From the NCBI GenBank assembly GCA_904063045.1, contig CAJFCJ010000057.1:1-64000 (forward strand): a stretch of 64,000 nt of DNA, in the 5' to 3' direction. The translations under genes and the position numbers were made by a program. Under the pieces are notes generated by a model that did no database searches, was not told where the DNA came from, and worked only from the letters and a program-made list of their open reading frames with translations. Below are positions 630 to 41,144 of the stretch, in pieces. Source of the DNA: Dimorphilus gyrociliatus. Taxonomy: Eukaryota; Animalia; Annelida. Every line of letters starts with the position of its first letter. Positions within the stretch are counted from its first letter, which is position 1.

Positions 630-2432
630 TTATATTTTAATTATCTTTAGAGCAATACTCTCTATGATTAAATCGTCAAGAAAACAATTTTGTACATCAG
701 AGAGAGAACATAAATAAACATCTAATTCTAAAAGGTGTTGGCAAAACTTTAAACAAGTAAAAATCTTTTCAAAAGATTCACCCAATCTTTGATTATGACT
801 CAAAAATAATCTCTCTATATGCAGAGTGTTCATTAGTAAATTATACAAATAAAAGCCATCTTCCTCTGATAGATTACAACTGGAAAAGTCAATTATTGTT
901 AGGGAAGAAGATGAAGATTTTAGTGCTGAGCAGATCTTTTCAAAGCCCTTTCCCATAGAATCATTAGAGGACAGGTCAATTTCTTTTAGTGCATTACAGT
1001 TTTCCAATAATTTAGCGATCCAAAAACATTGTATTTCTGACAAGCTGCACACAGCAAAATCAATCTTATTTATAGAATGAGATGATAGTGATAATCTAAT
1101 TCCGTGATATAATTTTTCAAAACCATTGCAAAGATTTCTATTGTAGCTTAAATCAATTGTTTCCAAATGCTTGCAGTTTTCCAGTAAGTCACTCAATGGA
1201 CTGCAATCTTCTTTTGATAAATTACAGTGACAAAAAGCGATGTCCTTTAGAGAGGACGATGATGATTTTAAACCTTTCGAAATTTTTTCAAATCCATTTC
1301 CCAAATTATCATTGAATCCTAAATTAAGTGTTTGTAATATAGTACAATTTGTTAATAAATCACCAAGCCAATTAGCCTGAAGTTCTGATAAATTACATGA
1401 TGAAAACTCTAATTTAACAATTGTAGAACTTGACAATTTTAGACTGGTAACAATGTCCAGTAATCCTCTGCCCATATTTTTATTATAGTCCATACTCAAT
1501 TTTTGTAGACAACATTTCTGTAATAAATTACTTAAGAAAAGGCAATCATTCTCAGAAATAGAGCACCTATGAAAGTCGATCTTTGTTAAGGAAGAAGATA
1601 AGGATTCTAACGATTTACATATTTTCCCAAATGATTTTCCATTGTAGAGGAAACCACCAAATTTGATTGATTTTAATACAGTACACTTTTGGAGATATTC
1701 AATCATCCAATCACTTTGCTTCTCTGTTAAACTATTACAATCACAAATATTTATTTTTAACAGAGATGTTGCTGAAGACATTAAACCTTTACAAATCCAC
1801 TGATATCCATCATCCAATTCTTTATTTTGGTTTAGGTAAATTTCTTGTAATTGAGTACATTTCAACAATAAATACCCTATCCAAAGGCAGTCCTCATTGG
1901 AAAGGTAACACACTGAAAAGTCAATTTTAGTTAAACAGGAAGAGGAAGATTCTAATCCTTTGCATATACTCTCAATTCCTCCACTTGCTCCACGTGTACA
2001 GCTTAAAGTAAATGACTTGATGCTATGACAATTTAACAATGAATTTCCTAAGCAAATGAAATCTTTGTTTGAAAATCTACAATTTTTTATTTCAATATTT
2101 TCAATGCAACTATTTAAATATAAGTTTGGTAATTTTTCAAATTTTTTAATGCTTAATGTTTTAATATTATGATTTTTTAAGAAAAACAAATTATCAACAT
2201 TACAAAAATTTTTCCCTTCGAGAGTGAAATTTGTTAAATTTGAAATATCACTTGAAAAAAAATTCAACTCTTCCTTTGTGAAGTTTTTATTCTTCCCACA
2301 ACAGTAATCCAAAATTTTTGCTGTCAAAGATGGCGGCATACAATAATTGTGTTTTTTACACATTTCGCTCATACAATGTAAGTTCTTTCCCACATATTTT
2401 ATTAAAAGAATTTCCAAAGAGGTGGCAGCCAT
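630..2432 (-). CDS. Intronless RNI/NLR-type LRR protein (600 aa) with N-terminal BC-box/Cullin-box-like motif
   Basis: Uninterrupted ORF with alternating ~28/29-aa LRRs (e.g. SSSCLTKIDFSVCYLS / CTQLQEIYLNQN). N-terminus SLEILLIKYVGKNL...CMPPSLTAKILDY resembles the ZER1/ZYG11-type VHL box. ATG lies in a CAAAATGGC context. Confidence 0.85.
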   Translation of the reverse strand: MAATSLEILLIKYVGKNLHCMSEMCKKHNYCMPPSLTAKILDYCCGKNKNFTKEELNFFSSDISNLTNFTLEGKNFCNVDNLFFLKNHNIKTLSIKKFEKLPNLYLNSCIENIEIKNCRFSNKDFICLGNSLLNCHSIKSFTLSCTRGASGGIESICKGLESSSSCLTKIDFSVCYLSNEDCLWIGYLLLKCTQLQEIYLNQNKELDDGYQWICKGLMSSATSLLKINICDCNSLTEKQSDWMIEYLQKCTVLKSIKFGGFLYNGKSFGKICKSLESLSSSLTKIDFHRCSISENDCLFLSNLLQKCCLQKLSMDYNKNMGRGLLDIVTSLKLSSSTIVKLEFSSCNLSELQANWLGDLLTNCTILQTLNLGFNDNLGNGFEKISKGLKSSSSSLKDIAFCHCNLSKEDCSPLSDLLENCKHLETIDLSYNRNLCNGFEKLYHGIRLSLSSHSINKIDFAVCSLSEIQCFWIAKLLENCNALKEIDLSSNDSMGKGFEKICSALKSSSSSLTIIDFSSCNLSEEDGFYLYNLLMNTLHIERLFLSHNQRLGESFEKIFTCLKFCQHLLELDVYLCSLSDVQNCFLDDLIIESIALKIIKI

Positions 2433-3123
2433 TTTGAAATCGGTAAAGAGTGTAAATAACCATTCTGGACACTGCGTTCAATTAGAATAGAATTCAACAA
2501 ATAGTCTTTGTTAAACTGTAAAGAAATGACAAATGAGACAGTAGAATAAGTTTTCTCATTCTATTAACTTTGAAGACCGTTAATTGAGAGAATTAAAATG
2601 ACATGATTATTTTAGACATTGGTTATATACTTTATTGTTTTGTGATTGATTCAATTGAGAGAACTTTGACTTAGTTCATTCTGATAAAATAAACTAACAA
2701 AAGGATCAAGAGGTTTTTAAGAGTGCTTAAGGATCAAGAAATTTGCTGTAGAAAATGTGGACAATTTTACCTTTTTACTGCCTTTTTACTTCAACCCTAA
2801 CCAACCAGTTTTCAGACCACTTTGAGTAGTAAAGAGGAAATAAATTGTATATATTTCTCAGACCTTAGAAATACCTTTAACCATGGCTTACATTCTCTCC
2901 TCCCTCCGTTGTATTCGCTATATCTTTTCAGAAACATTTCTATTATTGTAAGAACTGCCAAAAGAATATTGCAGATTATATTCAGGATTATAGGTGCCAC
3001 TTATATTTCTCTGTCCATTCAGTTCCATATATTCTGTTATATCTTTCAATTGTTGCTCAACAAATGATATCATATATTCTGTATTTTCTCCATCAACTTT
3101 CATTTTTTTCAATTGTTCGTATC

Positions 3124-3952
3124 CATCTAAAACTGCTAAACGATGGAGTTGAAGAAATTATAAATAGTTTAAAAAATTGTCCAAGCCATTTAGAGAAAAT
3201 TTCAATACAGAATATGGATTTTAGAAGACTAAATTCAAAACTCTTTGGGGAATGTCTTGCACAATTATCATTCATTATTGTATTTTGGATTTTATAGCGA
3301 AAATAACATTAAATCCGGATTTAACAGTATAATCTCAGGATTATCTTCTGCATCTCATTGTTTAACAGTCATCAACTTATTCAATTATAATTTATGCGAC
3401 AGTAAATGTTCAAGTTTGGCAAATTTTTTGAAAACTTGCTCCAATTTACAAGAGATTCACTTGGCTACTTTTGAAAGATTACAAAATGGAGCTGTAGATA
3501 TATTCAATTCACTTCAATCTTCTACTCATTCGCTTAAAGTATTACATTTACATTTCTACGGTGCAAGTGTCAGAGACGGTATTCAGTACGGAAATCTTGT
3601 AGAGAAATGTCACTGTTTGCAAGAAATTGACCTTAGCTGTATGAATTGGTTACAAACTAGCTTTGAACATATATTTCACTGTCTAAAGTCCTCATCCAAT
3701 TCCCTATTGAGAGTAAACATGGCCAACTGTCTCACAATGAACAACAACAATGATTTAATTAGAATTCTTTTAGAAAATCAAACCAAATTAGAAGAGTTAA
3801 GAGCTGGAGGAAATGGCGCATTTCTCAATATTGAAACTATGATCAAGAAAACTGGTTGGAGGAAAACATGGCAAACTGCCAATCCATATATTAAGGAAAC
3901 AAATTCAATTTATCAAAGCGGGAACCGTTTCCTCCTATTCCGTGATATCTAG
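3124..3952 (+). pseudogene. Frameshifted, 5'-truncated RNI-type LRR gene
   Basis: LRR text NDGVEEIINSLKNCPSHLEKISIQN...GECLAQ continues in another frame as YHSLLYFGF...LTVINLFNYNL (shift near 3260-3270). The last ~35 codons are non-LRR and overlap an antisense TIR relic. Confidence 0.7.
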
Positions 3953-4950: not shown

Positions 4951-5204
4951 CTGACTCCAAGATAAAACAAAGCTTTAAAGATAAAAAGCTTTCTAAAATA
5001 TAGAATATGATATTTATCTTTAAATTCATTTTAGAATATTCTCTATAGATATCTTTTAGTTTAATGAAACATAAGGTAAATGATCCTGCATTGATTTTAA
5101 GGCATCAATACATATTATTTGAATAAAGTTCAATAATTATTCAATTAATTACCATATAGGCCTTTAGTCTATTCTATTTAATGTGCATTTGTACTGTTTG
5201 AAGT

Positions 5205-5400
5205 GTGGTACATATAAGAGGCTGAAGGTGGCCATTGTGCCTCACCCCTCATACAGCCCTGATTTGGCTCCCTCTGACTATTACCTTTTTGGAAGATTGA
5301 AGGTCCATATCGGAGGATTCCATTGTGGAAATTTGGAGGAATTAAAAATAGATATAAAAGATTTTCTTAGGAGAAAACAACCTCTTTTTACCAGAACAGT
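5205..5400 (+). mobile_element. Mariner transposase C-terminal fragment
   Basis: PHPSYSPDLAPSDYYLFGRLK matches the mariner HPPYSPDLAPSDYxLF motif. Confidence 0.85.
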
Positions 5401-5739
5401 ATTTGTGTACTTCCTAGGAAATGACAGGCTTGCATTTTATCTAAATTTCTTCATATTTGATCATCATTGGACCTTTCAAGTTATTTTTCAAAGCTAACTG
5501 ATTAAACCTTAAGTTTAAACACAAAGCAATTAGTAAAATTTATTAGATTAAACCTTTGTTGTTCTAGTGTATCAAAGTATGATAAAACCAAGCAGTTAAT
5601 AAAGTTATTCATCCTTTTATGTTGAACAATATTGATCACATGATTCATGGTGTATCACGTGATTAAAATGGCTACTGCTAAAATATTTTATCACAAAAAA
5701 CATTGTTAGATTTGTTCCGTTGATATTTTACCTAAAAAG

Positions 5740-7152
5740 ATGAACAAGAGATTAAATAATATTTTTAAAGGAATTTTAAAATCATCTAACACTCTAAAAT
5801 CAATCAGTATCATAAATTGTAATTTAAGCGAAACTCAGTGTAAAAATATTGGAAATCTTATGAAAGGCTGTTGCAAAATAGAAAAAATAGAGCTAATTGG
5901 CAATTACAATTATGAAAATGGATATATGAATATTTGTGAAGGACTTGTTCAATCATCAAACACCTTAAAAGAGATTAATTTTAAAGAATGTAATTTGAAT
6001 GAAAAAGAATGTAGAATGATGAAAATTTTTCTGAAATATTGTTCAAAAATAGAGATAATCAATCTAAAAGGGAATAATGAGATGGAAAATGGATTATTAG
6101 ATATTTGTGAAAGTATTCTTCCATCATCTCCATCATCATCATTGTCATTGCACACTCTTAAGAATATTAATCTGGGATGGTGTAATTTAAATACAAAACA
6201 GTGTAGAAAAGTGGGACATGTTTTAAAAAATTGTCCTAATATGGAGACAATCAAACTAGAAGGAAATAAGTTGATGAAAGAAGGATTTTCATATATTTGT
6301 AAAGGACTCAGTCAATCACCAAATAATTTAAAACATATAAAATTTAGTTGTTGTAATTTAACTGAAAACCAAGGTAAAATTTTAGGAGATTTACTACAAA
6401 CTTGTTTCACAATAGAAACAATAAATTTAAGAAATAATACAAATTTAAATAATGGATTAAATAATATTTTTGAAGGATTATTAAAATCATCAAAAACATT
6501 AAAATCAATCAACTTGGCTTGTTGTAGTCTAATTGAAAATCATGGTAAAATGATTGGCAAACTTTTACAAAATTGTTGTAATATTGAAAGAATTAATTTA
6601 AAATCTAATCAAAATTTAAAAAATGGATTGTCAGATATTTTTGGTGGACTTTTAAAATCGTCAAATAATTTAAAATACTTGAAATGTAAACATTGTAATT
6701 TAGATGAAAAACAATGTTTATGGATTGGAAATTTATTGAGATTTTGCCACAGTATTGAAGAATTTAATTGTGGATATAATTCTAAAATTGGAAATGGATT
6801 AATTATTATTTGTCAACAACTCCTCAATTCATCAAACACTTTAAAATCTTTGAATTTTAGTTGGTGTTCATTGGAACAACATCATTGTGAACAGATACTA
6901 AATCTTTTGCAATCTTGTACTAAACTTGAAAAACTTCATTTAGGAGGTAATTTAAACATTGGAAATGGATTAGTGAATATTTCTAAAGCTCTTTGCAATT
7001 CAAAAAGTTCTTTGAAAATTATAAATTATTGGGGTTGTAATTTTAATACAAAAACTTCATTAACAATTGAAAATATATTTGAAAATTTTACTGGAATAGA
7101 AAGATTAAATTTAGATAGGAATGAACTCATAGAAGAAGAAGAGTGTGATTAA
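5740..7152 (+). CDS. Intronless RNI/NLR-type LRR protein (470 aa), LRR-only
   Basis: Regular 57-aa (29+28) super-repeats, e.g. SSNTLKSISIINCNLSETQCKNIGNLMKG/CCKIEKIELIGNYNYENGYMNICEGLVQ. An upstream in-frame ATG at 5668 is separated from it by a TAG. Confidence 0.85.
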   Translation: MNKRLNNIFKGILKSSNTLKSISIINCNLSETQCKNIGNLMKGCCKIEKIELIGNYNYENGYMNICEGLVQSSNTLKEINFKECNLNEKECRMMKIFLKYCSKIEIINLKGNNEMENGLLDICESILPSSPSSSLSLHTLKNINLGWCNLNTKQCRKVGHVLKNCPNMETIKLEGNKLMKEGFSYICKGLSQSPNNLKHIKFSCCNLTENQGKILGDLLQTCFTIETINLRNNTNLNNGLNNIFEGLLKSSKTLKSINLACCSLIENHGKMIGKLLQNCCNIERINLKSNQNLKNGLSDIFGGLLKSSNNLKYLKCKHCNLDEKQCLWIGNLLRFCHSIEEFNCGYNSKIGNGLIIICQQLLNSSNTLKSLNFSWCSLEQHHCEQILNLLQSCTKLEKLHLGGNLNIGNGLVNISKALCNSKSSLKIINYWGCNFNTKTSLTIENIFENFTGIERLNLDRNELIEEEECD

Positions 7153-10369: not shown

Positions 10370-10946
10370 TTATATGCTGATGCTAAATTTACTAACTCAA
10401 TCAATTGAATATCATTATTAAGGTAGAATATAAAAACGGTCAAATATACAATCTACATGTTTTCTTGATTGTTGGACTTGTCCTACTAAAATTGTTACAT
10501 CTTATGCAACTCTCCAACCTGAGAAATTCAACTATTATTTAGAAGAGGAAAACAATAAAAACATGACCATATTTACAACTTTTCTTTGTCTTCAAATGTT
10601 ACTTTTGTTTTTGTGAACATTGAAATTTGTCAACTATCAACCCTTAAAAGAGTATATAAACCCTACGAAATTAACAGTTGATAGTTCAGTTTTCTAACCG
10701 TCAGCTAGTTGTTTAAACTAGCTTGTTTAGAACTAGAAGCTCATTTTACTCAATACATATTCTTTGGACGAAATACTCGTGTTTTGTTAATTAATTTCTA
10801 CCAAAATTGCCTTTGTTAGACTATTTGTGGACGAACTTTAAAGGTTCTATTTGGACCAGTACTTTGGCAAGTTGGTAAATGATTGGAAAGGACGATTACA
10901 GTTGTGACGAACCAGAAATTCCTACAATTACAATACAACAAAGTAC
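10370..10946 (+). repeat. Dispersed repeat family R, copy 1
   Basis: Closely similar to 27330-27778 and, inverted, to 17728, 25510 and 29906. Ends in CCTACAATTACAATACAACAAAGTAC. Confidence 0.85.
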
Positions 10947-25139: not shown

Positions 25140-25509
25140 AAGGAAGTCAACAGCCTAATCATGAAGGAAAGAAAGATCTAAAAGTTGATGTTGAAATAAA
25201 AAGGGAACTGAAAAACTTATGCCAAAAAGACTTCACTACAAGTGGAAGAAAGCTGGCAGAAACAGTTCTTTTTAATAACAAGAAAAATACTGATTTTCTA
25301 CCAAACCCGAAATATTTAAAAAGGATGGCCAATTCAACCAAACAAAAGAAGAGACCAATGGAACCAAAAGATTATGACTTTGAATTAAATATGGATTTCA
25401 TACCCAACAACTTTCTGAAGAAAGACATCTGTGAAAAGAATGAAAGGATTCTTATATTTGGAACAGACTATCAGTTTGAATTGTTGAGTAAATCAGGGCA
25501 TTTGTTTGT
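25140..25509 (+). mobile_element. MULE transposase fragment (resumes at 27191-27330)
   Basis: YLKRMANSTKQKKRPMEPK...ERILIFGTDYQFELLSKSGHLFV, continuing at 27191 as ...DKKLRIVKEPFYQLLTIQSYVKKNG...PLAFIFMTSKH. Homologous to 33969-34775. Confidence 0.85.
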
Positions 25510-26169: not shown

Positions 26170-27050
26170 CTATAGTTGCACCATTCTAATTCCTATGAAA
26201 TAGAAGAATGGGAATGAAACTTGTTTTATTGCAAAGGTGATAATGGCTCCACCCTTTCGTAGGAAGTCACATCCAAGTATTATTGCCATATCCAACTTTT
26301 CCATCATAAAGAATTCTTGCTCCATAATTCTTCCAGAAAATTGAATATTCAAATTTGATCTTTCTTTTTGCATATTTCCATCTGCTGAAGTAATTATTGG
26401 TAGGCCAGAAGTTTCATTCTTTATAAATCTTGGATCCAATAGTTTAATTTCCTTTTCTATTATAAATGACATTAATGCTCCAGTATCACATAATGCAATT
26501 ATTTCTCTTTCATTATGGTTTTTCATGCGAAATTGGAAATCTTCTCTCTCTTTAACCTGCGATGTATATTTTAAAGTGTGCAACTTTTTCTTCTCTTAAA
26601 GTTAAAAATTGCCATTTTTCCTTTATTTGTTTCTCTATCATTAGGTTCAGCATTAATAAGCCTGTTACAGACTGCTCTTTCTTCATACCTTCCATTTCTA
26701 ATTCTTTGGTTTGGTTGATATCTATTTTGAGAAAAAGATTTAAATTTATTTTCAATTTGGTTTGTGTAACTGTTATTGTTATCAAATCTCTTTTTGAATT
26801 GTTTAAATTTAATTTCTTCATCTTTTCTTGAGTTTTCAAAGAAAATTTCAGCTCTTTTTGCCAATTTAATGTATTGTGAAACAGAATTAACTCTTCCATC
26901 TCTCTCAACATAATTAACAATCTTTCATTTAAACCATTCTTAAAAATACTCAGGAGTTGAATTTCTCTAACTCTTTTTAGGAACAATGACCATTTCAGTA
27001 GATTTGAATGGTAGGAATTTTTCCACAAGTTCTTTAATTCTTCTAACAAA
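26170..27050 (-). mobile_element. Ty3/gypsy-type gag-aspartic protease fragment
   Basis: ALCDTGALMSFI...IILGCDFL is a retropepsin motif pair. An upstream frameshifted gag-like region lies at 26560-27050. Confidence 0.8.
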
Positions 27051-27329
27051 ACTTTGAACAGTTTCTTTTTTAAACTGCCTTAATTTATCAATATCCTTTT
27101 TGTAGAACGTAGGATCTGGATTGAATTCTTCATCTAATGCATCCTACATTTCATTTTCTGTGGTATAAGCAGGAAGGCTTTCAATTACTTAATCAGGGCA
27201 TTTGTTTGTTGATAAAAAATTGAGAATTGTAAAAGAACCATTTTACCAATTATTGACTATCCAATCTTATGTGAAAAAAAATGGGATCATGAAACATGAC
27301 CCCCTGGCCTTCATTTTCATGACATCTAA

Positions 27330-27778
27330 ACATATGCAACTGTCCAACCTTCGAAATTCTACTATTATTCAGGAGTAGAAAACAATAAAAACATGAGCAT
27401 ATTTAGAACTTTTCTTTGTCTTAAAATGTTACTTTTGTTTTTGTGAACATTGAAATTTGTCAACTATCAACCCTTTAAAGAGTATATAAACACTACGAAA
27501 TTAACAGTTCATAGTTCGGATTTCTAACCATCAGCTAGTTGTTTAAACTAGCTTGTTTAGAGCTAGAAGCTCATTTTACTCAATACATATTCATTACACG
27601 AAAAACTGGTGTTTTGTTGATTAATTTCTACCGAAATTACATTTGTTAAGACTATTTGTGGACGAACTTAAAAGATTCTATTTGTGTAAGTACTTTGGCA
27701 GATTGGTAAATGATTGGAAAAGACGATTACAGTTGTGATGAACCAGAAATTCCTACAATTACAATACAACAAAGTATA
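27330..27778 (+). repeat. Dispersed repeat family R copy
   Basis: Near-colinear with 10500-10946. Confidence 0.85.
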
Positions 27779-27822
27779 TTTTTACTAAAACATTCGCAAA
27801 ACACTACACAGCTTTACAAAAA

Positions 27823-28035
27823 TTGATAGAAAAAATAAAAAAAAAAGATTTCATAATCAAACCAAGCAAGTGTGCTTTCCTACAGGAATCAGTACAATTC
27901 CTTGGTCACAAGATTACACAAAATGGTATTGAAACTGATCCAGAAAAGATTCAGAAAATAAAATATGCTGAATTTCCTAAGTTTTGCAAATATCACTTTA
28001 GAGTCATTCAAAAATTCTTATTAGATCCAACATAA
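27823..28035 (+). mobile_element. Ty3/gypsy reverse transcriptase C-terminal fragment
   Basis: IKPSKCAFLQESVQFLGHKITQNGIETDPEKIQKI matches the KCxF...V.FLGH.I...G..PDP.K motif. Confidence 0.85.
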
Positions 28036-28045
28036 ACATATTCTC

Positions 28046-28400
28046 TTACTGAAAACAATTAAATGTTTCTCTCAGATATTGAATTTGTTCACCATTAAAA
28101 TTCCAACCGAAGAATCCAATATATTTCAGGGAGTTTGAAGAAGATTTGAGTCCATCATATATCACTTTAAAGCCATTCCTCATTTTACAAGCTAGTTCAT
28201 CATTCAAATCACAATCAGCAACTTTAATTGTTTTCATAGAGTTTGAAGGAGATTTGAGTCCATAACATATCATTTCAAACCCATCATCCATATTTCTGTT
28301 TGTGGATAGGTTAACATATTTTAATGATGCACATTTTTCAATAAAAAATGCTTTTCAAATTTGAAAAGAAAATTTAAGAGGTGTTTTTTGATAGTTGTAT
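28046..28400 (-). pseudogene. RNI-type LRR gene fragment
   Basis: KYVNLSTNRNMDDGFEMICYGLKSPSNSMKTIKVADCDL...GLKSSSNSLKYI. Confidence 0.75.
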
Positions 28401-29024: not shown

Positions 29025-29660
29025 GGCTTTGCCATATCTGCCATATAGTGTGATTAAAAATCAATTCAATGACATTTAGAATGAACTGGCAAAAGAAAAT
29101 AAACTCACTAATTTGTATGAATATGTTTCTAATACATGGATAAAAAGTTCATTTTGGCCTCCAGAGACTTAATCTGTCTTTGGTCAAAGTATCAGAAGAA
29201 ATAATGATCTGGAAGGTTACCATCACAGGCTCAACAAAATTATTGGAGAAAATGCTTCTTTCTATTTTGTCATAGATGAATTGAAGAGGGAGGCAGACCT
29301 AATTTATCTGGGGTCGACAGAAAATGTCCACAAATGAGAAATTTCAAGACAAAAATTTGGATTGAGAAATGGTTAGGGAGTAGAAAAGAGCAACTGATTT
29401 GTACTTAGGAGGGTCTCCTCTAAGGGTTAGGGGTAATGTAAAAGGATAGGTACAGCTGAGGGCTGGGTTAGGGTTAGGGTAAAAGCACTCATTTGTGGAC
29501 GTTTTCTGTCGCATCCAATTTATCTTTATAACAAGCATTTAAGTGGAAGAAACATCATTAGACTTCAAAGGAGGATTTATACCCATATTCAAAATGATCT
29601 TTTCTTAATTTGAGAAAATTTATAAAAGGGTGAAATTACTGCGAAACAGCTTCTTCAATT
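29025..29660 (+). mobile_element. MULE transposase C-terminal fragment split by a MITE
   Basis: ALPYLP...YVSNTWIKSSFWPPET*SVFGQSIRRNNDLEGYHHRLN...DELKREADLIY; homologous to 33228-33680. Confidence 0.85.
29310..29516. mobile_element. MITE family A
   Basis: TIRs GGGGTCGACAGAAAATGTCCACAAATGAG / CTCATTTGTGGACGTTTTCTGTCGCATCC. Perfect 9-bp TSD AATTTATCT (29301-29309, 29517-29525). TTAGGG repeats inside. Confidence 0.92.
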
Positions 29661-29739
29661 GCACTTTGAATTGTATTATTGAAAAATAGCTGACTATTAC
29701 TTGATATCAATAAAACTTCACATGAAAAAAATTTTCATT

Positions 29740-30710
29740 AAAACATTTGGTTAATAAGTTTCCCAACTTTTTACAAGTTTGCTGATTTAAGTTGCACCAT
29801 GAAAAATGAATATTCTTTAGTATATTTGAAGCAGAAAGAATATCTTCACAATGACTTCTAATCCAATTCCACAATTTCTGTTACCATCAACATTAATTTT
29901 TTCTGTACTTTGATGTACGGTAATTGTAGGAATGTCTGCTTCTTCTAAACAGTATTCATCCTTTCCAATCATTTATCAACTCACCAAAGTACTCACACGA
30001 ATAGAACCTTTCAAGTTCCTACACAAGTAGTCTTAATAAATGTAATTTTGGTAGAAATTAATCAACAAAATGTCAAAATTTTGCTTAAAGAATATGTATT
30101 GAGTAAGTGAGTTTCTAGTTTAAACAATCAGCTGATGGTTACAGAACTGAACTGCAAAACTGAGGAAATGTATTTCCTTTTGTACATTTACCACAGCTTG
30201 GGTTGACTTGCTCAAAGGATTACGAAGTTGAAATGTAATGGTCTCATAATGCACATATAACAAAGACATGAAAAACTATTGCATCACTTATGGCTAACAT
30301 GTGGCACTGCAAAAACAAGCCTGGCTCTTCCACATCTGTTGTTAATAATTTGTAACAAGTTTGACAATATTATAATTCCTACAACACAAAAGCCATTCTA
30401 TAGTTCCGCCATTACAATTGATACGAAATAAAAGCCTTTCTAAAGTTCTATAATATCTAAAGTCTGAATATCATTATGCTAATATCTCTAATTTCACAGT
30501 TTGAATTCTTGAACAATTTTTCAACATATTTCCTATCTGTTCAAAATGTTTGTTATGTAGATAACAACTTGAAAAGTTGATATGCTTCAAAGTATTTGTT
30601 GAAAGGAGAAGTCCTTTACAAATATTTTTTATCCCATTTTCAATATTTTCATTTCCTCCTAAATGAATTGTTTCTAATTTTGAACAAGTTTTCAGTAATT
30701 TTTCATACAT
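29740..30710 (-). pseudogene. RNI-type LRR gene fragment interrupted by repeat R
   Basis: 30710-30480 reads CSKLETIHLGGNENIENGIKNICKGLL...CSRIQTVKL. After the repeat, 29905-29740 reads EKINVDGNRNCGIGLE...LKNIHFSWCNLNQQTCKKLGNLL. Confidence 0.7.
29906..30440 (-). repeat. Dispersed repeat family R copy
   Basis: Starts GTACTTTGATGTACGGTAATTGTAGGAAT; colinear with 25510-26150. Confidence 0.8.
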
Positions 30711-30989
30711 TGTTTAAAATACTGCTAACCTTGTGCTGAAGAGAGAATTTAAAATATTTTATGCATTGACAAAAAATCTATCAACTTAATGGTTGTCAAT
30801 AAGTATACAATCATACAACATATTACCTTTCTAAAACTATCAACATTAAGCAAAACTAATGTCAACACATCTATATATTTTTGGGTATGCCTGTAAACCT
30901 GTTTTTCTTTTTTTTTGTCAGATACCCACCATCTTACTCACTAAAAATGCAAAAATCATTCATTGATCAGAATGTTTAATTCATAACAC

Positions 30990-31090
30990 TCTCCCAAAGA
31001 TTTTCATCAATGTGTGGGAAATCTTGTGGCCATCCAATGTTGTTTTCTAAAGTAGAATATTGTCTGTTGTTGAATACAAATATTTAAAAT
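30990..31090 (-). mobile_element. Possible Tc1 C-terminal fragment
   Basis: IGWPQDFPHIDENLWES resembles the Tc1 WPxxSPDLNPIENLW motif. Confidence 0.4.
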
Positions 31091-31420
31091 CTTTAAGAAA
31101 TAGAAACAAGTGTAAATCATTTCTGTTTTGCCCAAAATATTAATTTCCAAACAGATATGAATTGCTATAAAATTAATTGTAATTCTTCCAACAGAGATGT
31201 TTGAAAGGTTTTGCATAATGTACTAAATGATTAAAATATCCCTACGAATGATTTATATATTAGTTAACATATGCATGATATGTACTATGAGTACACAACT
31301 CAGTTTTGAATATCTATTCAAAGTTCATTACATATGTCAATTCAGTCCATGTTTTAGTAATACATACTGTTCTAAAAATAGAAAACAAAAGTAAAACGAA
31401 ATATAAACTGTGGTTTTTAA

Positions 31421-33016
31421 ATGGCGGCAAAACAATATGTCATCAGTGAAAATGATCTTAAATGTGCAATTTGCTTAGATTCAGTGGTGGGAAAGGATCC
31501 AAGAATACTACTTTGTCAACATACGTATTGTTTTGGATGTATTCAACAATTGGAAATGAAAAATCATGAAATCTGCTGTCCAGAATGCAGACAGACTATC
31601 AAAGTACCAAAAGGGGATATTAATCAACTTGAAAAAAATCGAATTGTATACTTAAGAATATACTTAAGATTTAATAAAGAGCAAAAGCCTTTGCAAATAT
31701 CATGGGGAAGCAACAGATATGTATTGCCAAACACATGGTATTGAAAGTTTATGTGTTTCTTGTTTGGATGACAAACATGAGACTTGTAGTATTATTTCAA
31801 TGAAAAAATTTAAACAAATGAAAGAAAAATTTGATAGATTTTTGGAAAAAGACAAAAAAAATACAACTGAGATTTTGAATAAAATTAATGAATATGAAAG
31901 AAAAGCAATAATAAAAATACAAAGAGAATATGATACTCTGAGGTTAAAGTTTTATGCACTAAATAGATTAAAGAGAGAATTTTTCCAGACATTTTCAAAT
32001 CAACAAGAAACACTTGAAAAACTTTCACAAAGATCAAATGAAAAAGAATTAGAAATTCACACAGATATTCGAGTTCGCTATAAATTTAACAATTATTTTG
32101 ATACTGTTACTAGAGGTGAAGTAAATAAGTTTAATGATTATCAATTGAAAACGTATTCAAATCTGAAAAGAGAATTAGAAAATGATAAAACTCAAATGTC
32201 TGAAACATCTATAGTTTTTCGTAAAGTTGAAGAGATGGAATATTTTTTATCAAAATATCCAAAAATATTTGTCAATTTTAAGGATTGTAAACTCAACATG
32301 AAACAATGTGAAATTATAGGAAGTTTACTACGGAAATTTTCTACGATAGAATCTATATGTCTATCCTCTAATTTGGATATGGATAATGGATTTTTGGATA
32401 TTTGTAGTGGGCTTCGATTATCATCAAACAGTTTAAAGATTCTACAGTTAAGTAATTGTTCTTTTAATGTTATACATACTAGAGAGATTGGAACTTTGCT
32501 ACAGCGTTGTACCTCAATAGAAACCATACATCTATCTGGGAATACAATGATGGACAATGGAATAGTGGAGATTTCTCTCGGACTTGTACATTTAAAACAC
32601 ACTCTGAAGGATATTGATTTATCATTCTGTAAATTAAGTAATGATCAATGCACAGAAATTGCAAAAGGGATAAAATCCTGTTCCACACTAGAAACAATAA
32701 ATTTGAATGGGAATAGAAATATGGGAAATGGAATCAAAAATATATTTGAAGGACTTCAAACTTCATCAAAAACCTTAAAGAATCTTCAAATTGAACTGTG
32801 TGATTTGAATGAGCTACAAAGCAAAGACATTGGAAATTTGCTAAAACATTGTTCTACAATAGAAACAATAAATCTATGTGGGAATACTGAAATGAAAAAG
32901 GAAGTAATAAATATTTGTAATGCTCTTCAAATGTCATATAACACTTTGAAAAATTTAGATTTATCTCGTTGCAAATTGACTAAAGGAAAAAGATCACTGA
33001 TTGAAAATTTGTTAAA
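31421..33016 (+). pseudogene. TRIM-like RING - B-box - coiled coil - RNI-type LRR gene, frameshifted and 3'-disrupted by a MULE
   Basis: C3HC4 RING CAIC...CQHTYCFGC...CPEC. B-box CKYH...YCQTH...LCVSC...H lies in the +1 frame, followed by a helical region and LRRs. A 12-bp tandem duplication (GTATACTTAAGA/ATATACTTAAGA) sits at the shift. The ORF runs into the MULE TIR at 33017. Confidence 0.8.
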
Positions 33017-35698
33017 GAGTTGGGGTGCGAACGTACCTGGGTGTGAACGTACCCGGGTGCGAACGTACCCTGGGCGGGTGCGAACGTACCCAGGTACGTT
33101 CGCACCCTATTTTTATATTTATTTTATTTTTGAATTTTTGAATAAAAGATTTAGCTATAAATCTAAAAGTATGTATTTAAAAGACTAAATATTATACTAA
33201 AAAACAATAAAGCTTGACAAATGATATTTATGCTGGAGAGTAGATATGGGATGTCTGCATTAATAGATCAATTGATGTCAATTTGTTCAACTTGAAATCA
33301 TCCCATAAATCAAAAATTTTCTTTTGGATGTCAATATACTTTTTCTTTTGATGTTTGTAAATCCTTTTTTCTGACAGTAATTTCTCATAAACTGCAATCA
33401 ACTCAGACTCTTTTTTTAGCTCATCAACCAGCATGTAAAAAGAACCTTTAGCAGGCAGCTTACTATTCATTCTTTGATGCCATCCTTCACAATCATTATT
33501 GGTCCTAATAGACAAACCAAAAACTGACCAGTTATTTGGTTTCCATAATTTATTTTTGATCCAGTTTGTTTGGAAGTATTGCAGCAGGTCCAAAAATCTA
33601 TTTTTTTCACAAAGTTCTGCATTTATGCTGTCAAATGTTGGTTGAATAATATGTGCTGGCAAGAATGGCAGAGCCATCAATTTTCTGAAATCTTTCCAAT
33701 CATTTCCTTTTTCTTTGTATTTCTTTACATAGCCAAGAGCCTATTCAATAATATAAGTTATTTAATAGATAATGTTATATATATTTGAATGTAACTGACT
33801 TGTATTTTCCTGTATACTGCTTGTGTGAAATGAAATACACAACCTTGAAATTCAGTGAGGGGATATACTTTTGATAATGCTTTCCATAGTCCTTTTTCAA
33901 AATCCATTGTAATTCTTTTTGGATGAAAATCATTGATAAGATTGTTGATATGCTACAAAAAAGCAACTTTATTTATCATCACTTTTGAAGAGATAATATG
34001 AAATATTTACTTGAAATGCTTGTAAGTATGCTTTGGTATGCTTTGAAGTCAGAAAAATAAAAACAAGAGGAACTTGCTTCATATCACCACTCTTCTTAAC
34101 AAATGAGTGAATAGTGACAAGTTGATAAAATGGTTCTTTTACAATCTTGAAAGTACCATCAATGTACCAACAGTTGGATTTTGATAATAAATTCAGCTGA
34201 TGGTTTGTTGCAAAGATTAAAATTCTTTCTCCATTTTCACAAATATCTTTCTGCAAAAATTCATCAGGCAAAAATGTTTCATCTAAATTAAAGTTGTACA
34301 CTTTAGGTTCCACTGGCCTAAACTTTTGTCTATTTGAGTTTGCCATTCTCTTCAAATAGTTGATATCAGGAAGACAAGTTGCATTGGGTTCATAGGATAG
34401 AAGAACTTTTTCAGCAATGCTTCTTCCAGATGTTTGATTATCACTTCTGCAAACAATTTTCAAATCTGTTTTCACTTTAATATCCACTTCTAAATTCTTT
34501 TTTCTGTTGTGATTATGTTCCAAATTGCCTTTGAGAAATAAATTTCCATTTTGTCTTATTCTGGCCACACATCTTTTCTTCTTACTTCTCACACTGCACA
34601 CCCAAATAGTACTTGATGGTGTTTTATGTTTAACAACAAAAGAATATCCATCATTCAGTAAAATGTCATGTCCCTTTCTACTTCCTCCTTTTACAATCTC
34701 AAAATCACTTTTTGTGGATGATTCACAATATTCTTCAGCATTCTCTTCAACTTCCTCCAAAGAGTCTAGGTCCATTGATTGTCATTCTGAAAGAACATGA
34801 TTTTCATCCTCCAATATTGATTCCTCAACTGCAGCAATCTTATTTCTTTCATCAATAAAGCTTTCTTCAGAATTTACTTTGAATTGATGAATTTCCAGAT
34901 TAGTTAACTTCTTGAGCATGACAGTACATTTTCTTTTGTTACAAGGTTTGCAAATTGGTATGTTATGTGTTTCTATAAGAATATGTTAAAAAATATAATT
35001 ACATGAAAGCTGATTAAAGAGTTACATACCTGTGCATTTCCTATGAATAAGATTCTTACAAAGGCTGCATTTCAAATATTTTTGCCTTCCATAAATTGTT
35101 GAATGACAATTGTGACATTTGAAAGCCATTTTTTAATCTTCAATCAAATGTAGATGGTTATCTAAAAATATTTCCAGTTATCAATAAATTTCCTTTCCAA
35201 ATATTCAAAATGGCTGAAATTTTATTTATGAAAAATATTCAGCTTTTTCACAATTGAATATAGTATATTACATCAAAATATCATGAATCAACAATCTCAA
35301 TGATTAGATATAAATACTCACTTCTGTTGAAGCTTCCAAGAAGAACTTTGTCCAAATTTATTCAGTAAATATAGCTTTACTTTTGCAAGGATAAATATTC
35401 CAAGTGAAAGTTTATTTAATAAAACTATCACTATTAAAATGGCTGCTATTTCACTTTCAACAACATTTTCTTTTAAAGTAGTAATAATATTGTTGGGATA
35501 TGTATTCTATTTAATATCTGCATTCTATCTAATCAATATATTAACAATTATATTATGAAGGAAAAGAAGGAAAACAGGGTGTCAATGTACATGTTTATTC
35601 AAAAATTCAAAAATATAAAAATTGGGTGCGAACATACCCAGGTACATTTGCACCCACCCAGGGTACGTTCACACTCAGGTACATTCGCACCCAACCCC
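33017..35698 (-). mobile_element. Near-complete MULE (Mutator-like) DNA transposon, about 2.7 kb
   Basis: Inverted ~85-bp termini are built of GGGTGCGAACGTACC subrepeats (33017-33106, 35624-35698). Imperfect AATTT(A)GTTAA flanks. Contains a spliced transposase gene. Confidence 0.9.
33228..35129 (-). CDS. Spliced PHD - FLYWCH - MULE DDE transposase (one in-frame TGA)
   Basis: Exon 1 CHNC...CSLC...HRKC plus exon 2 CKPC form a PHD. FLYWCH GYSF...WVCS...C...HNH. Catalytic motifs YIDGTF, MDFEKG, GCVFHF, NNDCEGWH. TGA at 34782-34784 just before the ATG at 34775. Confidence 0.85.
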
Positions 35699-37270: not shown

Positions 37271-37365
37271 GGTCACAACAAGTTGTCATGTGTGTGTGAC
37301 TGCCACCAACTTTTTCTGATATTCGTCCTCACCTTCTACACCAATTAGAGGGTAACCTATCAAGT

Positions 37366-38336: not shown

Positions 38337-38934
38337 GAAAATTTAGAGGCTATGGAATGGGAAGAACAAAAATGAATTACACAAAGTTACAAAGGGTTTC
38401 ACGGTAGCACTAACTCATTTTTATGCATTTTGAAATTGCTGTTCTAAAATCATCATTTCTTATAAATTGCAAGAACAAAGATATTTTTATACATGAAAAT
38501 AGATATAAATCAATGCTTATATTCCTATAAATTGATATGCCTATATTCTTTCTTTATGAATATATGATGTTTGTCTGGTAAAAAATGTAATTTTTGTGAT
38601 ATTGTTCTACAAGAATTATTGAGGTTTATCAATCAATTTTTCAACAAATAGGAAAAGTTTGCTAGATAGTTTCTCTGTAGCAGAATGATCAGAACATGTA
38701 TTCATTAATATTAATAACATAAAATGTAAATAGGTCGTTGATACACATAAATAGGTTCCGATGGGTGCAATTTCAAATAAGTTTGGCTACATCAAGTTAC
38801 GATTTTCCCCTTTCCTTTAAAACTGTCGTTTGCCTATGTGCTTTTATTAATTGTTCGCAGTTCAATACAAAATGAAGGCCTATAACTTCAATATTGACAA
38901 TGAATTGAATTTTTTAGAAAAAGCAGAAGTTAAC

Positions 38935-39444
38935 ATGGCAGGCAAGGGAATGGACTATTGGATTTCTCATTTAAATTTAAAACCACATCCGGAAGGTGGA
39001 TATTATACTGAAAGTTTTAGGAGTAAAGATTTCATACCAAGTAAATGTACGGAAGGAAAATTTGATGGAAAAAGAAGTTATTTAACTTCAATTTATTTCC
39101 TGTTATCGGATGGTAATTTTTCTGCTTTTCATCGTTTAAAACAAGACGAAATTTGGAGTTATCATACTGGTTCAACAATTTTCGTTCATATTATTAACGA
39201 TGATGGATCCTACGAGAAACATAAAGTTGGTTTGAATATTGAAGACGGTGAAACTCCCCAATTTGTTATCAAAGCAGGACAATGGTTTTCCTATCACGTT
39301 GAAGAGGAAAATGGTTTTACTCTTGTTGGGTGTGTCGTTGTTCCTGGATTTGAATTTGCCGATTTTGAACTTGGTAAGAGGCAAGATTTAATTGCCAAAT
39401 ATCCTCAACATAAGGATATTATAACAAAATATACAAGAAACTGA
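38935..39444 (+). CDS. Cupin_5 (DUF985-type) cupin protein, intronless CDS
   Basis: LKPHPEGGYY, TSIYFLL, SAFHRLKQDEIWSYHTG, PQFVIKAGQWF and LVGCVVVPGFEFADFEL are the family motifs. Confidence 0.9.
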   Translation: MAGKGMDYWISHLNLKPHPEGGYYTESFRSKDFIPSKCTEGKFDGKRSYLTSIYFLLSDGNFSAFHRLKQDEIWSYHTGSTIFVHIINDDGSYEKHKVGLNIEDGETPQFVIKAGQWFSYHVEEENGFTLVGCVVVPGFEFADFELGKRQDLIAKYPQHKDIITKYTRN

Positions 39445-39914
39445 CATAAAGCTTTGAAAATAGAGAAGATATCCATACTACACCAAGAACATCAGTATTT
39501 ATGAACACAATGAGAACACTTTGAACAAAAATTCAAAATGCAAAATTTAATATCTCAACCATTACATTTTGACAGTAAATTTACAAAATAATCGTTTGAA
39601 TTTTGTGAATTTCAACTATAATTCTTCATGAAAACTGTTACAATTTTTACTATAACTAAAAATATAAATATAGAATCAGTTTTTCATGTATTCAATTTTT
39701 TGAAAGTATGTCATTCTATTCAAAAAAAAGTAACATCTGTCGTTCAAACAAGTTAACTATTATTTACCATAATACTATTCCAACATAACCCAGTGTCCAT
39801 GATATTTCTGGACACTGCCCTATAATTGAAACTACTTTTGATATGTTATGCAGATAATAAAAAATTTGTTTCTTTAGATAAAAAAAAATAGATATTTAAC
39901 CCTAAAAGAAGATA

Positions 39915-41144
39915 ATGGCTGAGAATTGTCTGACCCTGATTTGTTTAAAAGAAATTGGAAAGAATTTAATAGCATTAGGTGAATATTGCTCAAGTCAAAA
40001 ACTATTTTTACCTGATAGAATATCTCATCTTATTATTAATTATGTTTTTACAAATAACAAATTATTAACAACAAAAGAATTAAAATTCTTTTTATCAAAT
40101 ATTTTAAATATTTCAAACTTCAATTTAATTTATGAACAATACGAAAAAGATGAAACATTTGAATTTCTACAAAATCAACCAATAACTGTTTTACAATTAA
40201 AAAATATTAATTGTTTTAATGAGTATTTCTTTTCAAATAATCTACAAGAATTATCTCTTTATAATTGTCAAATTAAGGATTTTAATGAAAACTTATTACA
40301 TCAGTTTAAAGGCAATTTAAACATGTCCCATTTAAAAATTATCTTACCGGAAATGGATTTTCTCTTTCCAGCCAAATCTCCTAATTTTTATCATAAACTA
40401 TTTTCAATTATGCAATCATCATCATTAATAAGTTTTGAATTTGAAACTGCTTGCGTTTACGCTTCTATTATCAATTTTTTTGAAAACTGGTTAGAACAGT
40501 GTATAAATCTGGAGAGATTGATTCTAATAGGAACGTTTAATTTTGCAAATTTTCGCCATATTTCTTCTGCATTTAAAGCAATGGGACATTCGCTAAAAGA
40601 ATTAACATTACAAGTTTTAAATCTTGAATTTGATGAAATTCATATGTTTGAAAATTCACTTCAGTATCTTACAAATCTTGAAAAATTCAATCTAACAATA
40701 AAAATATACTCTGCTAGCTCATTTACATATAATTTAAATGAACTAAAATCATGTGGACATTCATTAAGAATATTTAAATTACATGTAAATAGAGTTAGTA
40801 TTTTATATTTGTGTAAAGCTTTGGAATGTTGTACAAGTCTTGAAATCATTGAAATTCTGTCAAGAATTCCAATCGATACTCAAGTCATTACTACTGCATT
40901 AAAATCATCAATAAATACTGTAAAACAGTTAAATATTGGAGTTGTACCTAAAGAAGAACATTGGTTTTCTTCAATCGTTGATTTCTTGGAAGAGTGTTCC
41001 TCTGCTCGAAAATGTTCAATATTTATAAAATATTTTCACAAACAAAGAGCAAAAAATATCTTGAAAAGATTGATATCGCTATCGTCATCGCCTGATCATT
41101 TAAATAATATAATGATATCAATTAAACGATTTCGGGATGAGTAG
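39915..41144 (+). CDS. Intronless BC-box/Cullin-box-like LRR protein (409 aa)
   Basis: NCLTLICLKEIGKNL...FLPDRISHLIINY aligns with the N-terminus of 630-2432. Divergent LRRs follow. Confidence 0.8.
   Translation: MAENCLTLICLKEIGKNLIALGEYCSSQKLFLPDRISHLIINYVFTNNKLLTTKELKFFLSNILNISNFNLIYEQYEKDETFEFLQNQPITVLQLKNINCFNEYFFSNNLQELSLYNCQIKDFNENLLHQFKGNLNMSHLKIILPEMDFLFPAKSPNFYHKLFSIMQSSSLISFEFETACVYASIINFFENWLEQCINLERLILIGTFNFANFRHISSAFKAMGHSLKELTLQVLNLEFDEIHMFENSLQYLTNLEKFNLTIKIYSASSFTYNLNELKSCGHSLRIFKLHVNRVSILYLCKALECCTSLEIIEILSRIPIDTQVITTALKSSINTVKQLNIGVVPKEEHWFSSIVDFLEECSSARKCSIFIKYFHKQRAKNILKRLISLSSSPDHLNNIMISIKRFRDE

What the first reader, a model, noticed from the sequence alone, without database searches (positions are those of the whole stretch)
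630..41144. One intronless NLR-type LRR family carrying swappable ubiquitin-ligase heads instead of NACHT
Seen: the same 28/29-aa RNI-type LRR family occurs at 630, 3124, 5740, 28046, 29740-30710 and 31421, with a divergent member at 39915, and no NACHT domain is present. Two copies start with a BC-box plus Cullin-box-like motif (SLxxLxxxxIGKNL...LPxxLxxxIL), one starts with RING-B-box-coiled coil, and one is LRR-only. Established: VHL-box LRR proteins (ZER1/ZYG11, PRAME) are Cul2 substrate receptors, and RING-B-box-CC defines TRIM ligases. Inference: a birth-and-death family of LRR recognition modules wired directly to ubiquitination by two routes, possibly a sense-and-degrade immune system, in the same window as TIR and Roco genes.
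Basis: partly seen in the sequence, partly recalled or inferred. Interest (0 to 1): 0.8.

Follow-up and report, generated by a model that had tools for sequence, protein, structure and literature searches.

The report
Worm LRR genes with ubiquitin-ligase heads
A tiny marine worm (Dimorphilus gyrociliatus) has a large, fast-turning-over family of intronless genes that join immune-sensor-type leucine-rich repeats to a head that looks like the docking site for a ubiquitin-ligase machine; in this window only two copies are intact.

Summary
All listed loci carry one family of 57-residue (28+29) ribonuclease-inhibitor/NLR-type LRR units, and I found no NACHT domain in the ORFs scanned.

The shared head of copies A (630-2432) and F (39915-41144) is a conserved module. 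It is found at the N-terminus of 141 protein clusters. Every cluster whose source I checked comes from D. gyrociliatus or from unidentified runs.
- Its only near-invariant residues are the Leu of a BC-box-like motif and the Pro of a Cul2-box-like motif, 17 residues apart.
- Its predicted fold best matches the Elongin-BC-binding N-terminus of human ZYG11B (Z 6.3, rmsd 2.3 A, 64 of 66 residues).
- No binding was tested.

The window is mostly a graveyard.
- B and the 28-30.7 kb pieces are relics.
- C starts mid-repeat and has no head.
- The TRIM-type copy E has a frameshift between RING and B-box, and its reading frame runs into a transposon. It still appears to be transcribed.

An intact intronless TRIM-LRR paralog exists elsewhere in the genome. 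Its LRRs group with arrays that carry the VHL-like head, so head exchange is supported. An immune role is only inferred.

The scan had already noted TRIM-LRR genes and VHL-box LRR clusters on other DNA of this genome.

The parts
630..2432 (-). Gene A. Intact intronless ORF of 600 aa: VHL-box-like head (aa 1-66), about three short LRRs (aa 67-130), then eight 57-aa RNI/NLR-type units.
   Evidence: ORF. Paralogs P0001-P0005 are 32-41% identical over the full length. Unit count.
2235..2432 (-). Head of A (aa 1-66), a four-helix module. The BC-box-like motif is at 2391-2420 (SLEILLIKYV; position 6 is Leu rather than Cys/Ser/Ala). The Cul2-box-like motif is at 2313-2339 (MPPSLTAKI).
   Evidence: AF2 models have pLDDT 83 and 81. 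The best PDB match is ZYG11B-EloB-EloC at Z 6.3. L6 and P33 are near-invariant across the family.
3124..3952 (+). Relic B. Three recognisable units, no head, no ATG start, and a frame change between 3124-3297 and 3245-3952.
   Evidence: Its closest arrays are of the A type (P0004, 33%).
5740..7152 (+). Copy C. A 470-aa ORF of eight units that starts mid-unit. There is an in-frame stop just upstream, and a transposase-like fragment lies at 5183-5497.
   Evidence: Its closest array is the TRIM-type paralog P0016 (45% over 453 aa).
28028..28351 (-). Relic D1, about 1.5 units, next to an LTR-retroelement fragment.
29674..29892 (-). Relic D2, one unit.
30486..30713 (-). Relic D3, one unit, 54% identical to P0016.
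31421..31645 (+). Gene E, RING finger part. The RING is at 31460-31591. The frame-1 ORF runs on to a stop at 31744.
   Evidence: Pfam zf-RING_2 at 30.1 bits against a cutoff of 27.3. 40% identical to P0016 aa 1-65.
31668..31691 (+). Zone in which E's reading frame must shift by +1. It lies between the frame-2 stop at 31665-31667 and the first B-box Cys at 31692.
   Evidence: Sequence. Contigs of four runs from two studies are colinear here, with no gap or joint. The paralog P0016 is encoded without an intron, and its linker is 18 residues against 19 codons plus 1 base in E.
31680..33022 (+). Gene E: B-box (31686-31781), a helical region, then about 4 LRR units. The frame is cut off by the transposon.
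   Evidence: RNA-like contigs cover 31430-33045.
33023..35693 (.). DNA transposon with complex terminal inverted repeats and FLYWCH-type ORFs on the minus strand. It interrupts E.
   Evidence: Inverted repeats at 33023-33120 and 35611-35693. FLYWCH Pfam hit. Contig depth is 40-80 times that of the unique flanks. No LRR homology lies beyond it.
39915..41144 (+). Gene F. Intact ORF of 409 aa with the same head (BC-like motif at 39927-39956, Cul2-like motif at 40008-40034) and a degenerate LRR region.
   Evidence: (23-25% identity over the full length to P0003 and P0004).

Best explanation
The window holds a decaying local cluster of an intronless gene family that I found only in D. gyrociliatus and in unidentified sequencing runs, one set of which belongs to a relative of it.

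A complete member has three parts:
- a 60-66-residue four-helix N-terminal head of the ZYG11-type VHL-box kind (a BC-box-like helix, 17 residues, then a Cul2-box-like helix);
- two or three short LRRs;
- a variable number (3 to 13) of 57-residue ribonuclease-inhibitor/NLR-type LRR units.

The most likely mechanism, which is inferred, is this. The head docks on Elongin C/B and Cullin-2, making each protein a substrate receptor of a CRL2 ubiquitin ligase. The variable LRR horseshoe picks the target.

A smaller set of relatives carries a TRIM-type head (RING, B-box and a helical region) on LRR arrays of the same sub-group. There the ligase is built in.

In this window:
- A and F look functional.
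- C has lost its head.
- E (TRIM type) is frameshifted and transposon-hit, but still appears to be transcribed.
- B and D1-D3 are relics.

Whether the targets are foreign (immunity) or the worm's own proteins is not known.
For: Shown:
- Family map, period and unit counts.
- RNI/NLR-type LRR.
- The head profile finds 141 clusters at E<=1e-3 among 1.84 billion representatives, almost all with the match at the N-terminus.
- Of the 20 clusters whose source I looked up, 6 are from NCBI's D. gyrociliatus, 13 from Logan runs and 1 from ENA. The runs traced for five of them are SRR233722xx and ERR142247xx.
- In 142 heads the consensus is [ST]-L-x-x-[LI]-[CSA]-L-x-x-[IV]-x-x-N-L.
- The published strict BC-box pattern is met in 64 heads, against 1.7 in shuffles.
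- The published Cul2-box pattern occurs in 132 of 142, against 10.6 in shuffles. Where both motifs are present, the Cul2-like box begins 17 residues after the BC box in 48 of 57 heads. The consensus patterns come from PMC4878042.
- Apart from Met1, only L6 and P33 are at least 90% conserved in the first 66 residues.
- The 130-aa AF2 model gives 9bid_A (ZYG11B-EloB/C) as top hit: Z 6.3, 127 residues aligned, model 1-130 to chain 13-162.
- The 66-aa model gives 9lk2_A (ZYG11B-EloB-EloC): Z 6.3, rmsd 2.3 A, 64 of 66 residues. It is the only hit with Z>=5 among 48,161 chains; the next has Z 4.4.
- Other cullin-adaptor boxes appear lower in that list: CRL2-APPBP2, the SPOP C-terminal domain, the KBTBD4 BACK domain and ZSWIM8.
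- P0016 is an intact, intronless RING/B-box/LRR gene of D. gyrociliatus.
- LRR units of C, E, D3 and P0016 cluster with those of P0015 and P0076, which carry the VHL-like head.
- E is covered from 31430 to 33045 by contigs of three runs that have no depth in the flanking intergenic DNA.
Against: - There is no sequence-level link to any known VHL-box protein. Pfam finds nothing in the head even at E<=10. Profiles of 8 and 46 heads do not reach ZYG11B in the PDB. Foldseek finds nothing.
- Z 6.3 is a middling score for a small helical domain.
- A itself has Leu at BC-box position 6, and F has Cys at position 1, so neither window copy fits the strict pattern.
- I did not check that the worm has Elongin B/C and Cul2.
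- Expression of A, C and F was not tested.
- That runs X2-X4 are RNA is inferred from their coverage pattern, not from their records.
- None of the window ORFs is in the public protein collection.
Confidence: 0.6

Rival explanations
1. The head is only a helical N-terminal cap or a dimerisation/adaptor module of the LRR domain, with no link to cullin ligases. Its likeness to the ZYG11B N-terminus reflects a common small helical arrangement.
For: The Z scores are middling, and there is no sequence or Foldseek match. The shape search of the ESM Atlas gives only generic LRR proteins.
Against: The two near-invariant residues are exactly the signature Leu and Pro of the BC and Cul2 boxes, usually 17 residues apart. 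The ZYG11B match covers 64 of 66 residues, starts at the same N-terminal position and stands 1.9 Z units above the next hit. Other cullin-adaptor boxes recur in the list.
Confidence: 0.2
2. The head is an F-box-like module. The proteins would then be FBXL-type receptors of SCF (Skp1-Cul1) ligases, not of CRL2.
For: The motif LPxxIxxxIFxY recalls the first F-box helix (my own knowledge). F-box-LRR proteins FBXL17 and FBXL2 appear at Z 4.3-4.4 for the 130-residue model. F-box/LRR clusters appear among weak language-model look-alikes.
Against: No Pfam F-box hit even at E<=10. No F-box protein is among the 50 best matches of the head-only model, so the FBXL matches of the longer model rest on its LRR part. 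The LP motif comes after the BC-like helix, not first.
Confidence: 0.07
3. The family consists of CRL2 receptors, but it works on the worm's own proteins, for instance in germline or developmental turnover or in genetic conflict (as proposed for the amplified mammalian PRAME family), not in pathogen sensing.
For: The architecture of a VHL box plus an irregular RNI-like LRR, together with multi-copy rapid turnover, is that of PRAME (PMC4878042 and PMC3614976). No immune evidence was obtained here.
Against: The LRR units are closest to NLR and RNH1 repeats. The genome paper says the few expanded families of this worm are mostly local duplicates linked to immunity, without naming them in the text held (PMC7854359). 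One member fuses a PARP9/14-type macrodomain to the head.
Confidence: 0.3
4. The window copies are all dead: a pseudogene graveyard of a family that is active elsewhere.
For: B, D1-D3, C and E are visibly damaged. The ORFs of A, C and F are absent from the public protein collection.
Against: A (600 aa) and F (409 aa) are uninterrupted and keep the conserved head residues. Random AT-rich DNA does not keep 1.2-1.8 kb open.
Confidence: 0.1

Closest known systems
ZYG11B / ZER1 (CRL2 substrate receptors)
   Same: An N-terminal VHL box is followed directly by LRRs. The predicted head superposes on ZYG11B residues 13-83 (Z 6.3, rmsd 2.3 A), and head plus first LRRs superpose on residues 13-162.
   Different: There is no detectable sequence homology. 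The C-terminal half is an RNI/NLR-type LRR array, not armadillo repeats. The family is multi-copy, intronless and, as far as I could trace it, confined to D. gyrociliatus and unidentified runs, rather than single-copy and conserved.
PRAME / LRRC14 family
   Same: A VHL box at the N-terminus of an RNI-like LRR protein, in a strongly amplified, fast-evolving gene family (PMC4878042, PMC3614976). A PRAME_C cluster appears among the weak look-alikes.
   Different: No significant sequence match. The repeats here are regular 57-residue NLR-like units. The host lineage is an annelid.
TRIM (RBCC) E3 ligases, e.g. fish finTRIM
   Same: RING, B-box and a helical region in the usual order in E and P0016. 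Multi-copy diversification is described for teleost TRIM genes in the abstract of PMC2657112.
   Different: The C-terminal recognition domain is an LRR array instead of B30.2/SPRY, NHL and the like. The window's copy is broken.
Animal NLRs (NLRC3/NLRP type) and ribonuclease inhibitor
   Same: The same 28+29-residue LRR type. Best outside hits are fish NLR LRRs and RNH1.
   Different: No NACHT or other nucleotide-binding switch, and no death-fold domain.
F-box/LRR proteins (FBXL)
   Same: The same logic: a small helical cullin-adaptor box at the N-terminus of an LRR receptor.
   Different: No F-box signature, and no F-box fold among the head-only matches.

Membership tests
VHL-box proteins (Elongin BC / Cul2 receptors) | BC box (S,T,P)Lxxx(C,S,A)xxxPhi | tested here: inconclusive
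   The family consensus fits, and 64 of 142 heads meet the strict pattern against 1.7 in shuffles. The window's A has Leu at position 6 and F has Cys at position 1.
VHL-box proteins (Elongin BC / Cul2 receptors) | Cul2 box PhiPxxPhixxxPhi downstream of the BC box | tested here: met
   Present in 132 of 142 heads, including A (MPPSLTAKI) and F (LPDRISHLI), against 10.6 in shuffles. It begins 17 residues after the BC box in 48 of the 57 heads that have both motifs. The Pro is at least 90% conserved.
VHL-box proteins (Elongin BC / Cul2 receptors) | Helical box fold like that of a solved Elongin-BC-bound receptor | tested here: met
   The top PDB match of both models is ZYG11B in complex with EloB/C (Z 6.3; rmsd 2.3 A over 64 of 66 residues). 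The Z score is middling, so this is support, not proof.
VHL-box proteins (Elongin BC / Cul2 receptors) | Physical binding of Elongin B/C and Cul2 | not testable with these tools
   No complex prediction or experiment was available.
TRIM / RBCC ligases | N-terminal RING finger | tested here: met
   zf-RING_2 at 30.1 bits against a cutoff of 27.3 in 31421-31744. A RING is also found in P0016, below threshold.
TRIM / RBCC ligases | B-box zinc finger after the RING | tested here: inconclusive
   zf-B_box at 17.7 bits (E) and 19.5 bits (P0016), both under the 24.1 cutoff, at the expected place and with a C-x2-H-x7-C...C-x2-C pattern.
TRIM / RBCC ligases | Coiled coil after the B-box | not tested
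   A lysine- and glutamate-rich stretch of about 150 residues is present. No prediction was run.
TRIM / RBCC ligases | All modules in one reading frame | tested here: not met
   In the window's E the RING and the B-box are in different frames, and contigs of four runs agree. The feature is met in paralog P0016.
NLR (NACHT-LRR) receptors | NACHT / NB-ARC nucleotide-binding domain | tested here: not met
   No hit in the Pfam scans of the family ORFs or of the neighbouring ORFs that were scanned.
RNI-like (ribonuclease-inhibitor-type) LRR | Alternating 28/29-residue units; homology to RNH1/NLR LRRs | tested here: met
   Lag-57 autocorrelation. RNH1 at E 1e-24 and NLRPs at about 1e-11.
F-box proteins | F-box motif / Skp1-binding fold | tested here: not met
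   No Pfam F-box hit at E<=10. No F-box protein among the 50 best head-only matches.
ZYG11 family | C-terminal armadillo-repeat degron-binding domain | tested here: not met
   After the head, the ORFs consist of LRR units up to the stop.

The most novel reading that the evidence does not exclude
Dinophilid annelids may have built a large intracellular receptor repertoire in which NLR-type LRR sensors are wired directly to ubiquitination instead of to a NACHT switch. Most would act through a ZYG11-like VHL box that recruits Elongin BC-Cul2, and some through a built-in TRIM head. Heads would be exchanged among LRR lineages, and copies turn over quickly. That would be a 'sense-and-degrade' arm of innate immunity.
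Probability: 0.25. Interest if true: 0.8.

Novelty: new variant of a known kind. Interest (0 to 1): 0.6.

Why it matters
If the head really recruits Elongin BC-Cul2, this worm and its relatives have well over a hundred divergent ubiquitin-ligase receptors whose target-binding part is the repeat type used by NLR immune sensors.

That would be a natural example of recognition coupled directly to degradation. It would parallel TRIM5/TRIM21 logic and the amplified PRAME family, but with LRR sensors.

It would also bear on how NLR-type LRR modules move between signalling heads during evolution.

The genes are short and intronless, and the genome is tiny, so binding and knock-down tests should be practicable.

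I found no paper describing the family. The genome paper only mentions a few locally duplicated families linked to immunity.

Tried and rejected
- **34-nt intron in E.** I first read 31646-31679 as a GT..AG intron joining RING and B-box. I rejected this. Contigs of four runs are colinear there. The intact paralog is encoded without an intron. The linker lengths differ by one codon plus one base.
- **Joined version of E.** I did not build or search one. Its two pieces were searched separately.
- **Pfam on the heads.** Nothing, even at E<=10.
- **Head profiles against PDB sequences.** Profiles of 8 and 46 heads gave only generic LRR hits on the second half.
- **Foldseek against the PDB.** Nothing for either model.
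- **ESM Atlas.** The shape search gave generic LRRs. The feature search gave only weak leads: Zer-1-like, LRRC41 and PRAME_C.
- **Exact-sequence look-ups of window ORFs.** None is on record.
- **Run ids and the genome paper's supplements.** Nothing useful.
- **Original C-terminus of E.** I looked for a target-site duplication around the transposon and found none, so I make no claim about the original C-terminus.
- **NACHT-caspase gene next to P0016.** It shows no family LRR unit in the part fetched.
- **P0150 as a ZYG11 orthologue.** It has a macrodomain and no ZYG11 match.
- **dN/dS.** Not attempted, because the paralogs are only 30-45% identical. Per-position entropy of the unit shows the usual variable x positions and is not evidence of selection.

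Full report
**Source**

The window is AT-rich (about 29% G+C) animal DNA. Three observations agree with that:
- The closest proteins to the window's ORFs are D. gyrociliatus entries.
- The window shares several copies of short interspersed repeats (77-93% identity) with an NCBI D. gyrociliatus contig, but none with contigs of the related unidentified organism.
- One DNA run holds 90% of the sampled words of the 29600-33200 stretch.

None of the window's ORFs is in the public protein collection as an exact sequence. They seem to be unannotated.

**The observation**

tblastn with the window's own ORFs maps one family to these places:
- 633-2432(-), copy A
- 3239-3949(+), copy B
- 5683-7149(+), copy C
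- 28028-28351(-), 29674-29892(-) and 30486-30713(-), pieces D1-D3
- 31680-33185(+), copy E
- 39915-41141(+), copy F, which is linked only to A

The repeat period is 57 residues in A, B, C and E, and barely visible in F. A unit HMM counts 8 units in A and in C, at least 3 in E, 3 in B and 3 weak ones in F. The unit consensus is GFxxICxGLKSSSxSLxxIxxxxCxLxExQxxxLGxLLxxCxxLExIxLxxNxN.

C matches ribonuclease inhibitor at 1e-24 and NLRP LRRs at about 1e-11. Outside the lineage the best hits are fish NLR LRRs. No NACHT domain was found in the 18 window ORFs scanned. The family, its positions and the absence of NACHT from the scanned ORFs are therefore confirmed.

**State of the copies**

- A (600 aa) and F (409 aa) are uninterrupted.
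- B has no head and changes frame between 3124-3297 and 3245-3952.
- C begins in the middle of a unit, with an in-frame stop just upstream. A fragment that looks like a mariner/Tc1 transposase tail (my reading; no Pfam hit) lies at 5183-5497.
- D1-D3 are one-unit relics lying among repeats and an LTR-element fragment.

E needs more detail:
- It has a RING above Pfam threshold and a sub-threshold B-box with the right ligand pattern, but the two are in different frames.
- The shift must lie in 31668-31691.
- I first took 31646-31679 for a 34-nt intron. Contigs of four runs from two studies run straight through it without a joint, and the intact paralog P0016 is encoded by an intronless 2139-nt gene. 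It is therefore a frameshift and not an assembly error.
- E's LRR frame then runs into a 2.67-kb transposon: inverted repeats at 33023-33120 and 35611-35693, a FLYWCH ORF, and depth 40-80 times that of unique DNA. No LRR homology follows it.
- Three runs (X2-X4) cover 31430-33045 but have no depth in the flanking intergenic DNA, while the DNA run X1 covers everything evenly. I infer that X2-X4 are RNA and that E is still transcribed. Their records do not say so.

**The head**

Eight heads align well. A profile of them finds 141 clusters at E<=1e-3 among 1.84 billion representatives, nearly all matched at their N-terminus.

I looked up the source of 20 clusters. Six are from NCBI's D. gyrociliatus, 13 from Logan assemblies and 1 from ENA. 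For five of the Logan clusters I traced the runs: SRR233722xx for four and ERR142247xx for one.

The SRR233722xx organism is a relative of D. gyrociliatus. It shares with it a bacterial-type diaminopimelate decarboxylase gene at 69% identity. It also carries tandem arrays of intronless 590-640-residue members.

Across 142 heads the consensus is [ST]-L-x-x-[LI]-[CSA]-L-x-x-[IV]-x-x-N-L. Where both motifs are present, Phi-P-x-x-Phi-x-x-x-Phi begins 17 residues after it in 48 of 57 heads. Against the published patterns (PMC4878042):
- The BC-box pattern is met strictly in 64 heads, against 1.7 in shuffles.
- The Cul2-box pattern is met in 132 heads, against 10.6 in shuffles.

Apart from the initiator Met, the only residues at least 90% conserved in the first 66 positions are L6 and P33. 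These are the signature residues of the two boxes.

AlphaFold models give four helices followed by short LRRs (130 residues, pLDDT 83; 66 residues, pLDDT 81). An exhaustive structural comparison with 48,161 PDB chains gave:
- For the long model, human ZYG11B bound to Elongin B/C ranks first: Z 6.3, 127 residues, model 1-130 on chain 13-162.
- For the head alone, ZYG11B-EloB-EloC ranks first: Z 6.3, rmsd 2.3 A, 64 of 66 residues. It is the only hit at Z>=5, and the next has Z 4.4.
- Lower in that list are the N-terminus of APPBP2 in its CRL2 complex, the SPOP C-terminal domain, the KBTBD4 BACK domain and part of ZSWIM8.

Against this, no sequence method links the head to a known VHL box. Foldseek is blank. 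A and F each miss one position of the strict BC pattern. I put the chance that the head is a working Elongin-BC/Cul2 box at about 0.6-0.7.

**Head exchange**

P0016 of D. gyrociliatus is an intact RING/B-box/helical/LRR protein.

I clustered proteins by best unit-to-unit identity. C, E, D3 and P0016 fall in one group with P0015 and P0076, which carry the VHL-like head. That group's nearest neighbours also carry the VHL-like head. A groups with P0001-P0005, P0022 and P0025 (BLAST ranks agree).

The TRIM-type arrays are thus nested among VHL-head arrays, which is what domain exchange predicts. This is a similarity clustering of repeats, not a rooted tree. P0015 and P0076 come from the related species.

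Another member, P0150 (DgyrCDS3853), places a PARP9/14-type macrodomain in front of the head. The head therefore occurs in more than one architecture.

**Comparison with known systems**

The design works like ZYG11/ZER1, PRAME and FBXL receptors: a small cullin-adaptor box on an LRR receptor. In the second head type it works like TRIM ligases.
- It is not an NLR, because it has no NACHT.
- It is not a ZYG11 family member, because it has no armadillo domain.
- It has no F-box signature.

I found no paper describing it. The genome paper states only that the nine expanded families of this worm are mostly local duplicates linked to immunity (PMC7854359).

Earlier notes of this scan had already reported TRIM-LRR genes (s1-080475, s1-080527, s1-080534, s1-080221) and VHL-box LRR clusters (s1-080697, s1-083776) on other DNA of the same genome. 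I checked only the existence of one intact intronless TRIM-LRR gene, and the presence of the family in two other sets of unidentified samples.

**Verdict**

The family is real and lineage-restricted as far as I could trace it. It is an undescribed variant of known ligase-receptor designs. The ligase link is supported by motif and fold, but untested. The immune reading is open. This particular window shows mainly the 'death' side of the family's birth-and-death turnover.

Noticed in passing
L004:599-1768 (-); D. gyrociliatus protein P0160 (DgyrCDS3857): A bacterial-type diaminopimelate decarboxylase gene sits among animal-type genes in the related organism. It is 69% identical to a D. gyrociliatus protein on a 4.5-Mb contig, and about 62% identical to Marinifilum (Bacteroidota) LysA. 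This is a candidate old horizontal transfer shared by dinophilids.
   Followed up: partly
P0150 (DgyrCDS3853, 834 aa), not in the window: A PARP9/PARP14-type macrodomain (PDB E 9e-16) is fused in front of the VHL-box-like head (aa 252-352), LRRs and a long helical tail.
   Followed up: partly
window 33023-35693: High-copy DNA transposon with about 80-100-nt terminal inverted repeats that are themselves internally palindromic. It carries a FLYWCH-finger ORF (33969-34775) and a second ORF (33228-33680). A deletion derivative skipping 33054-35625 is abundant elsewhere in the genome.
   Followed up: partly
window 10759-10945, 17721-17873, 25509-25696, 27589-27778, 29902-30093: About five copies of a roughly 190-bp interspersed repeat, 81-87% identical to L010:5143-5333 of an NCBI D. 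gyrociliatus contig.
   Followed up: no
L010:18335-22139 (+): A gene with faint NACHT/AAA_22 hits and a caspase (Peptidase_C14) domain lies 6 kb from the intact TRIM-LRR gene P0016. No family LRR unit is in the part fetched.
   Followed up: partly
L001:1-15999: Six same-strand, intronless genes of 587-638 residues within 16 kb in the related organism. Their reading frames carry 1-3 family LRR units; the head itself was confirmed for one of them, P0051.
   Followed up: partly
window 26170-28035: Fragment of an LTR retroelement. It has a retroviral-type aspartyl protease ORF on the minus strand and a reverse-transcriptase-like piece (my reading, not scanned) at 27823-28035 on the plus strand, abutting relic D1.
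   Followed up: no
window 38851-39444 (+): Ordinary Cupin_5 (DUF985) gene lying between the transposon and gene F.
   Followed up: no
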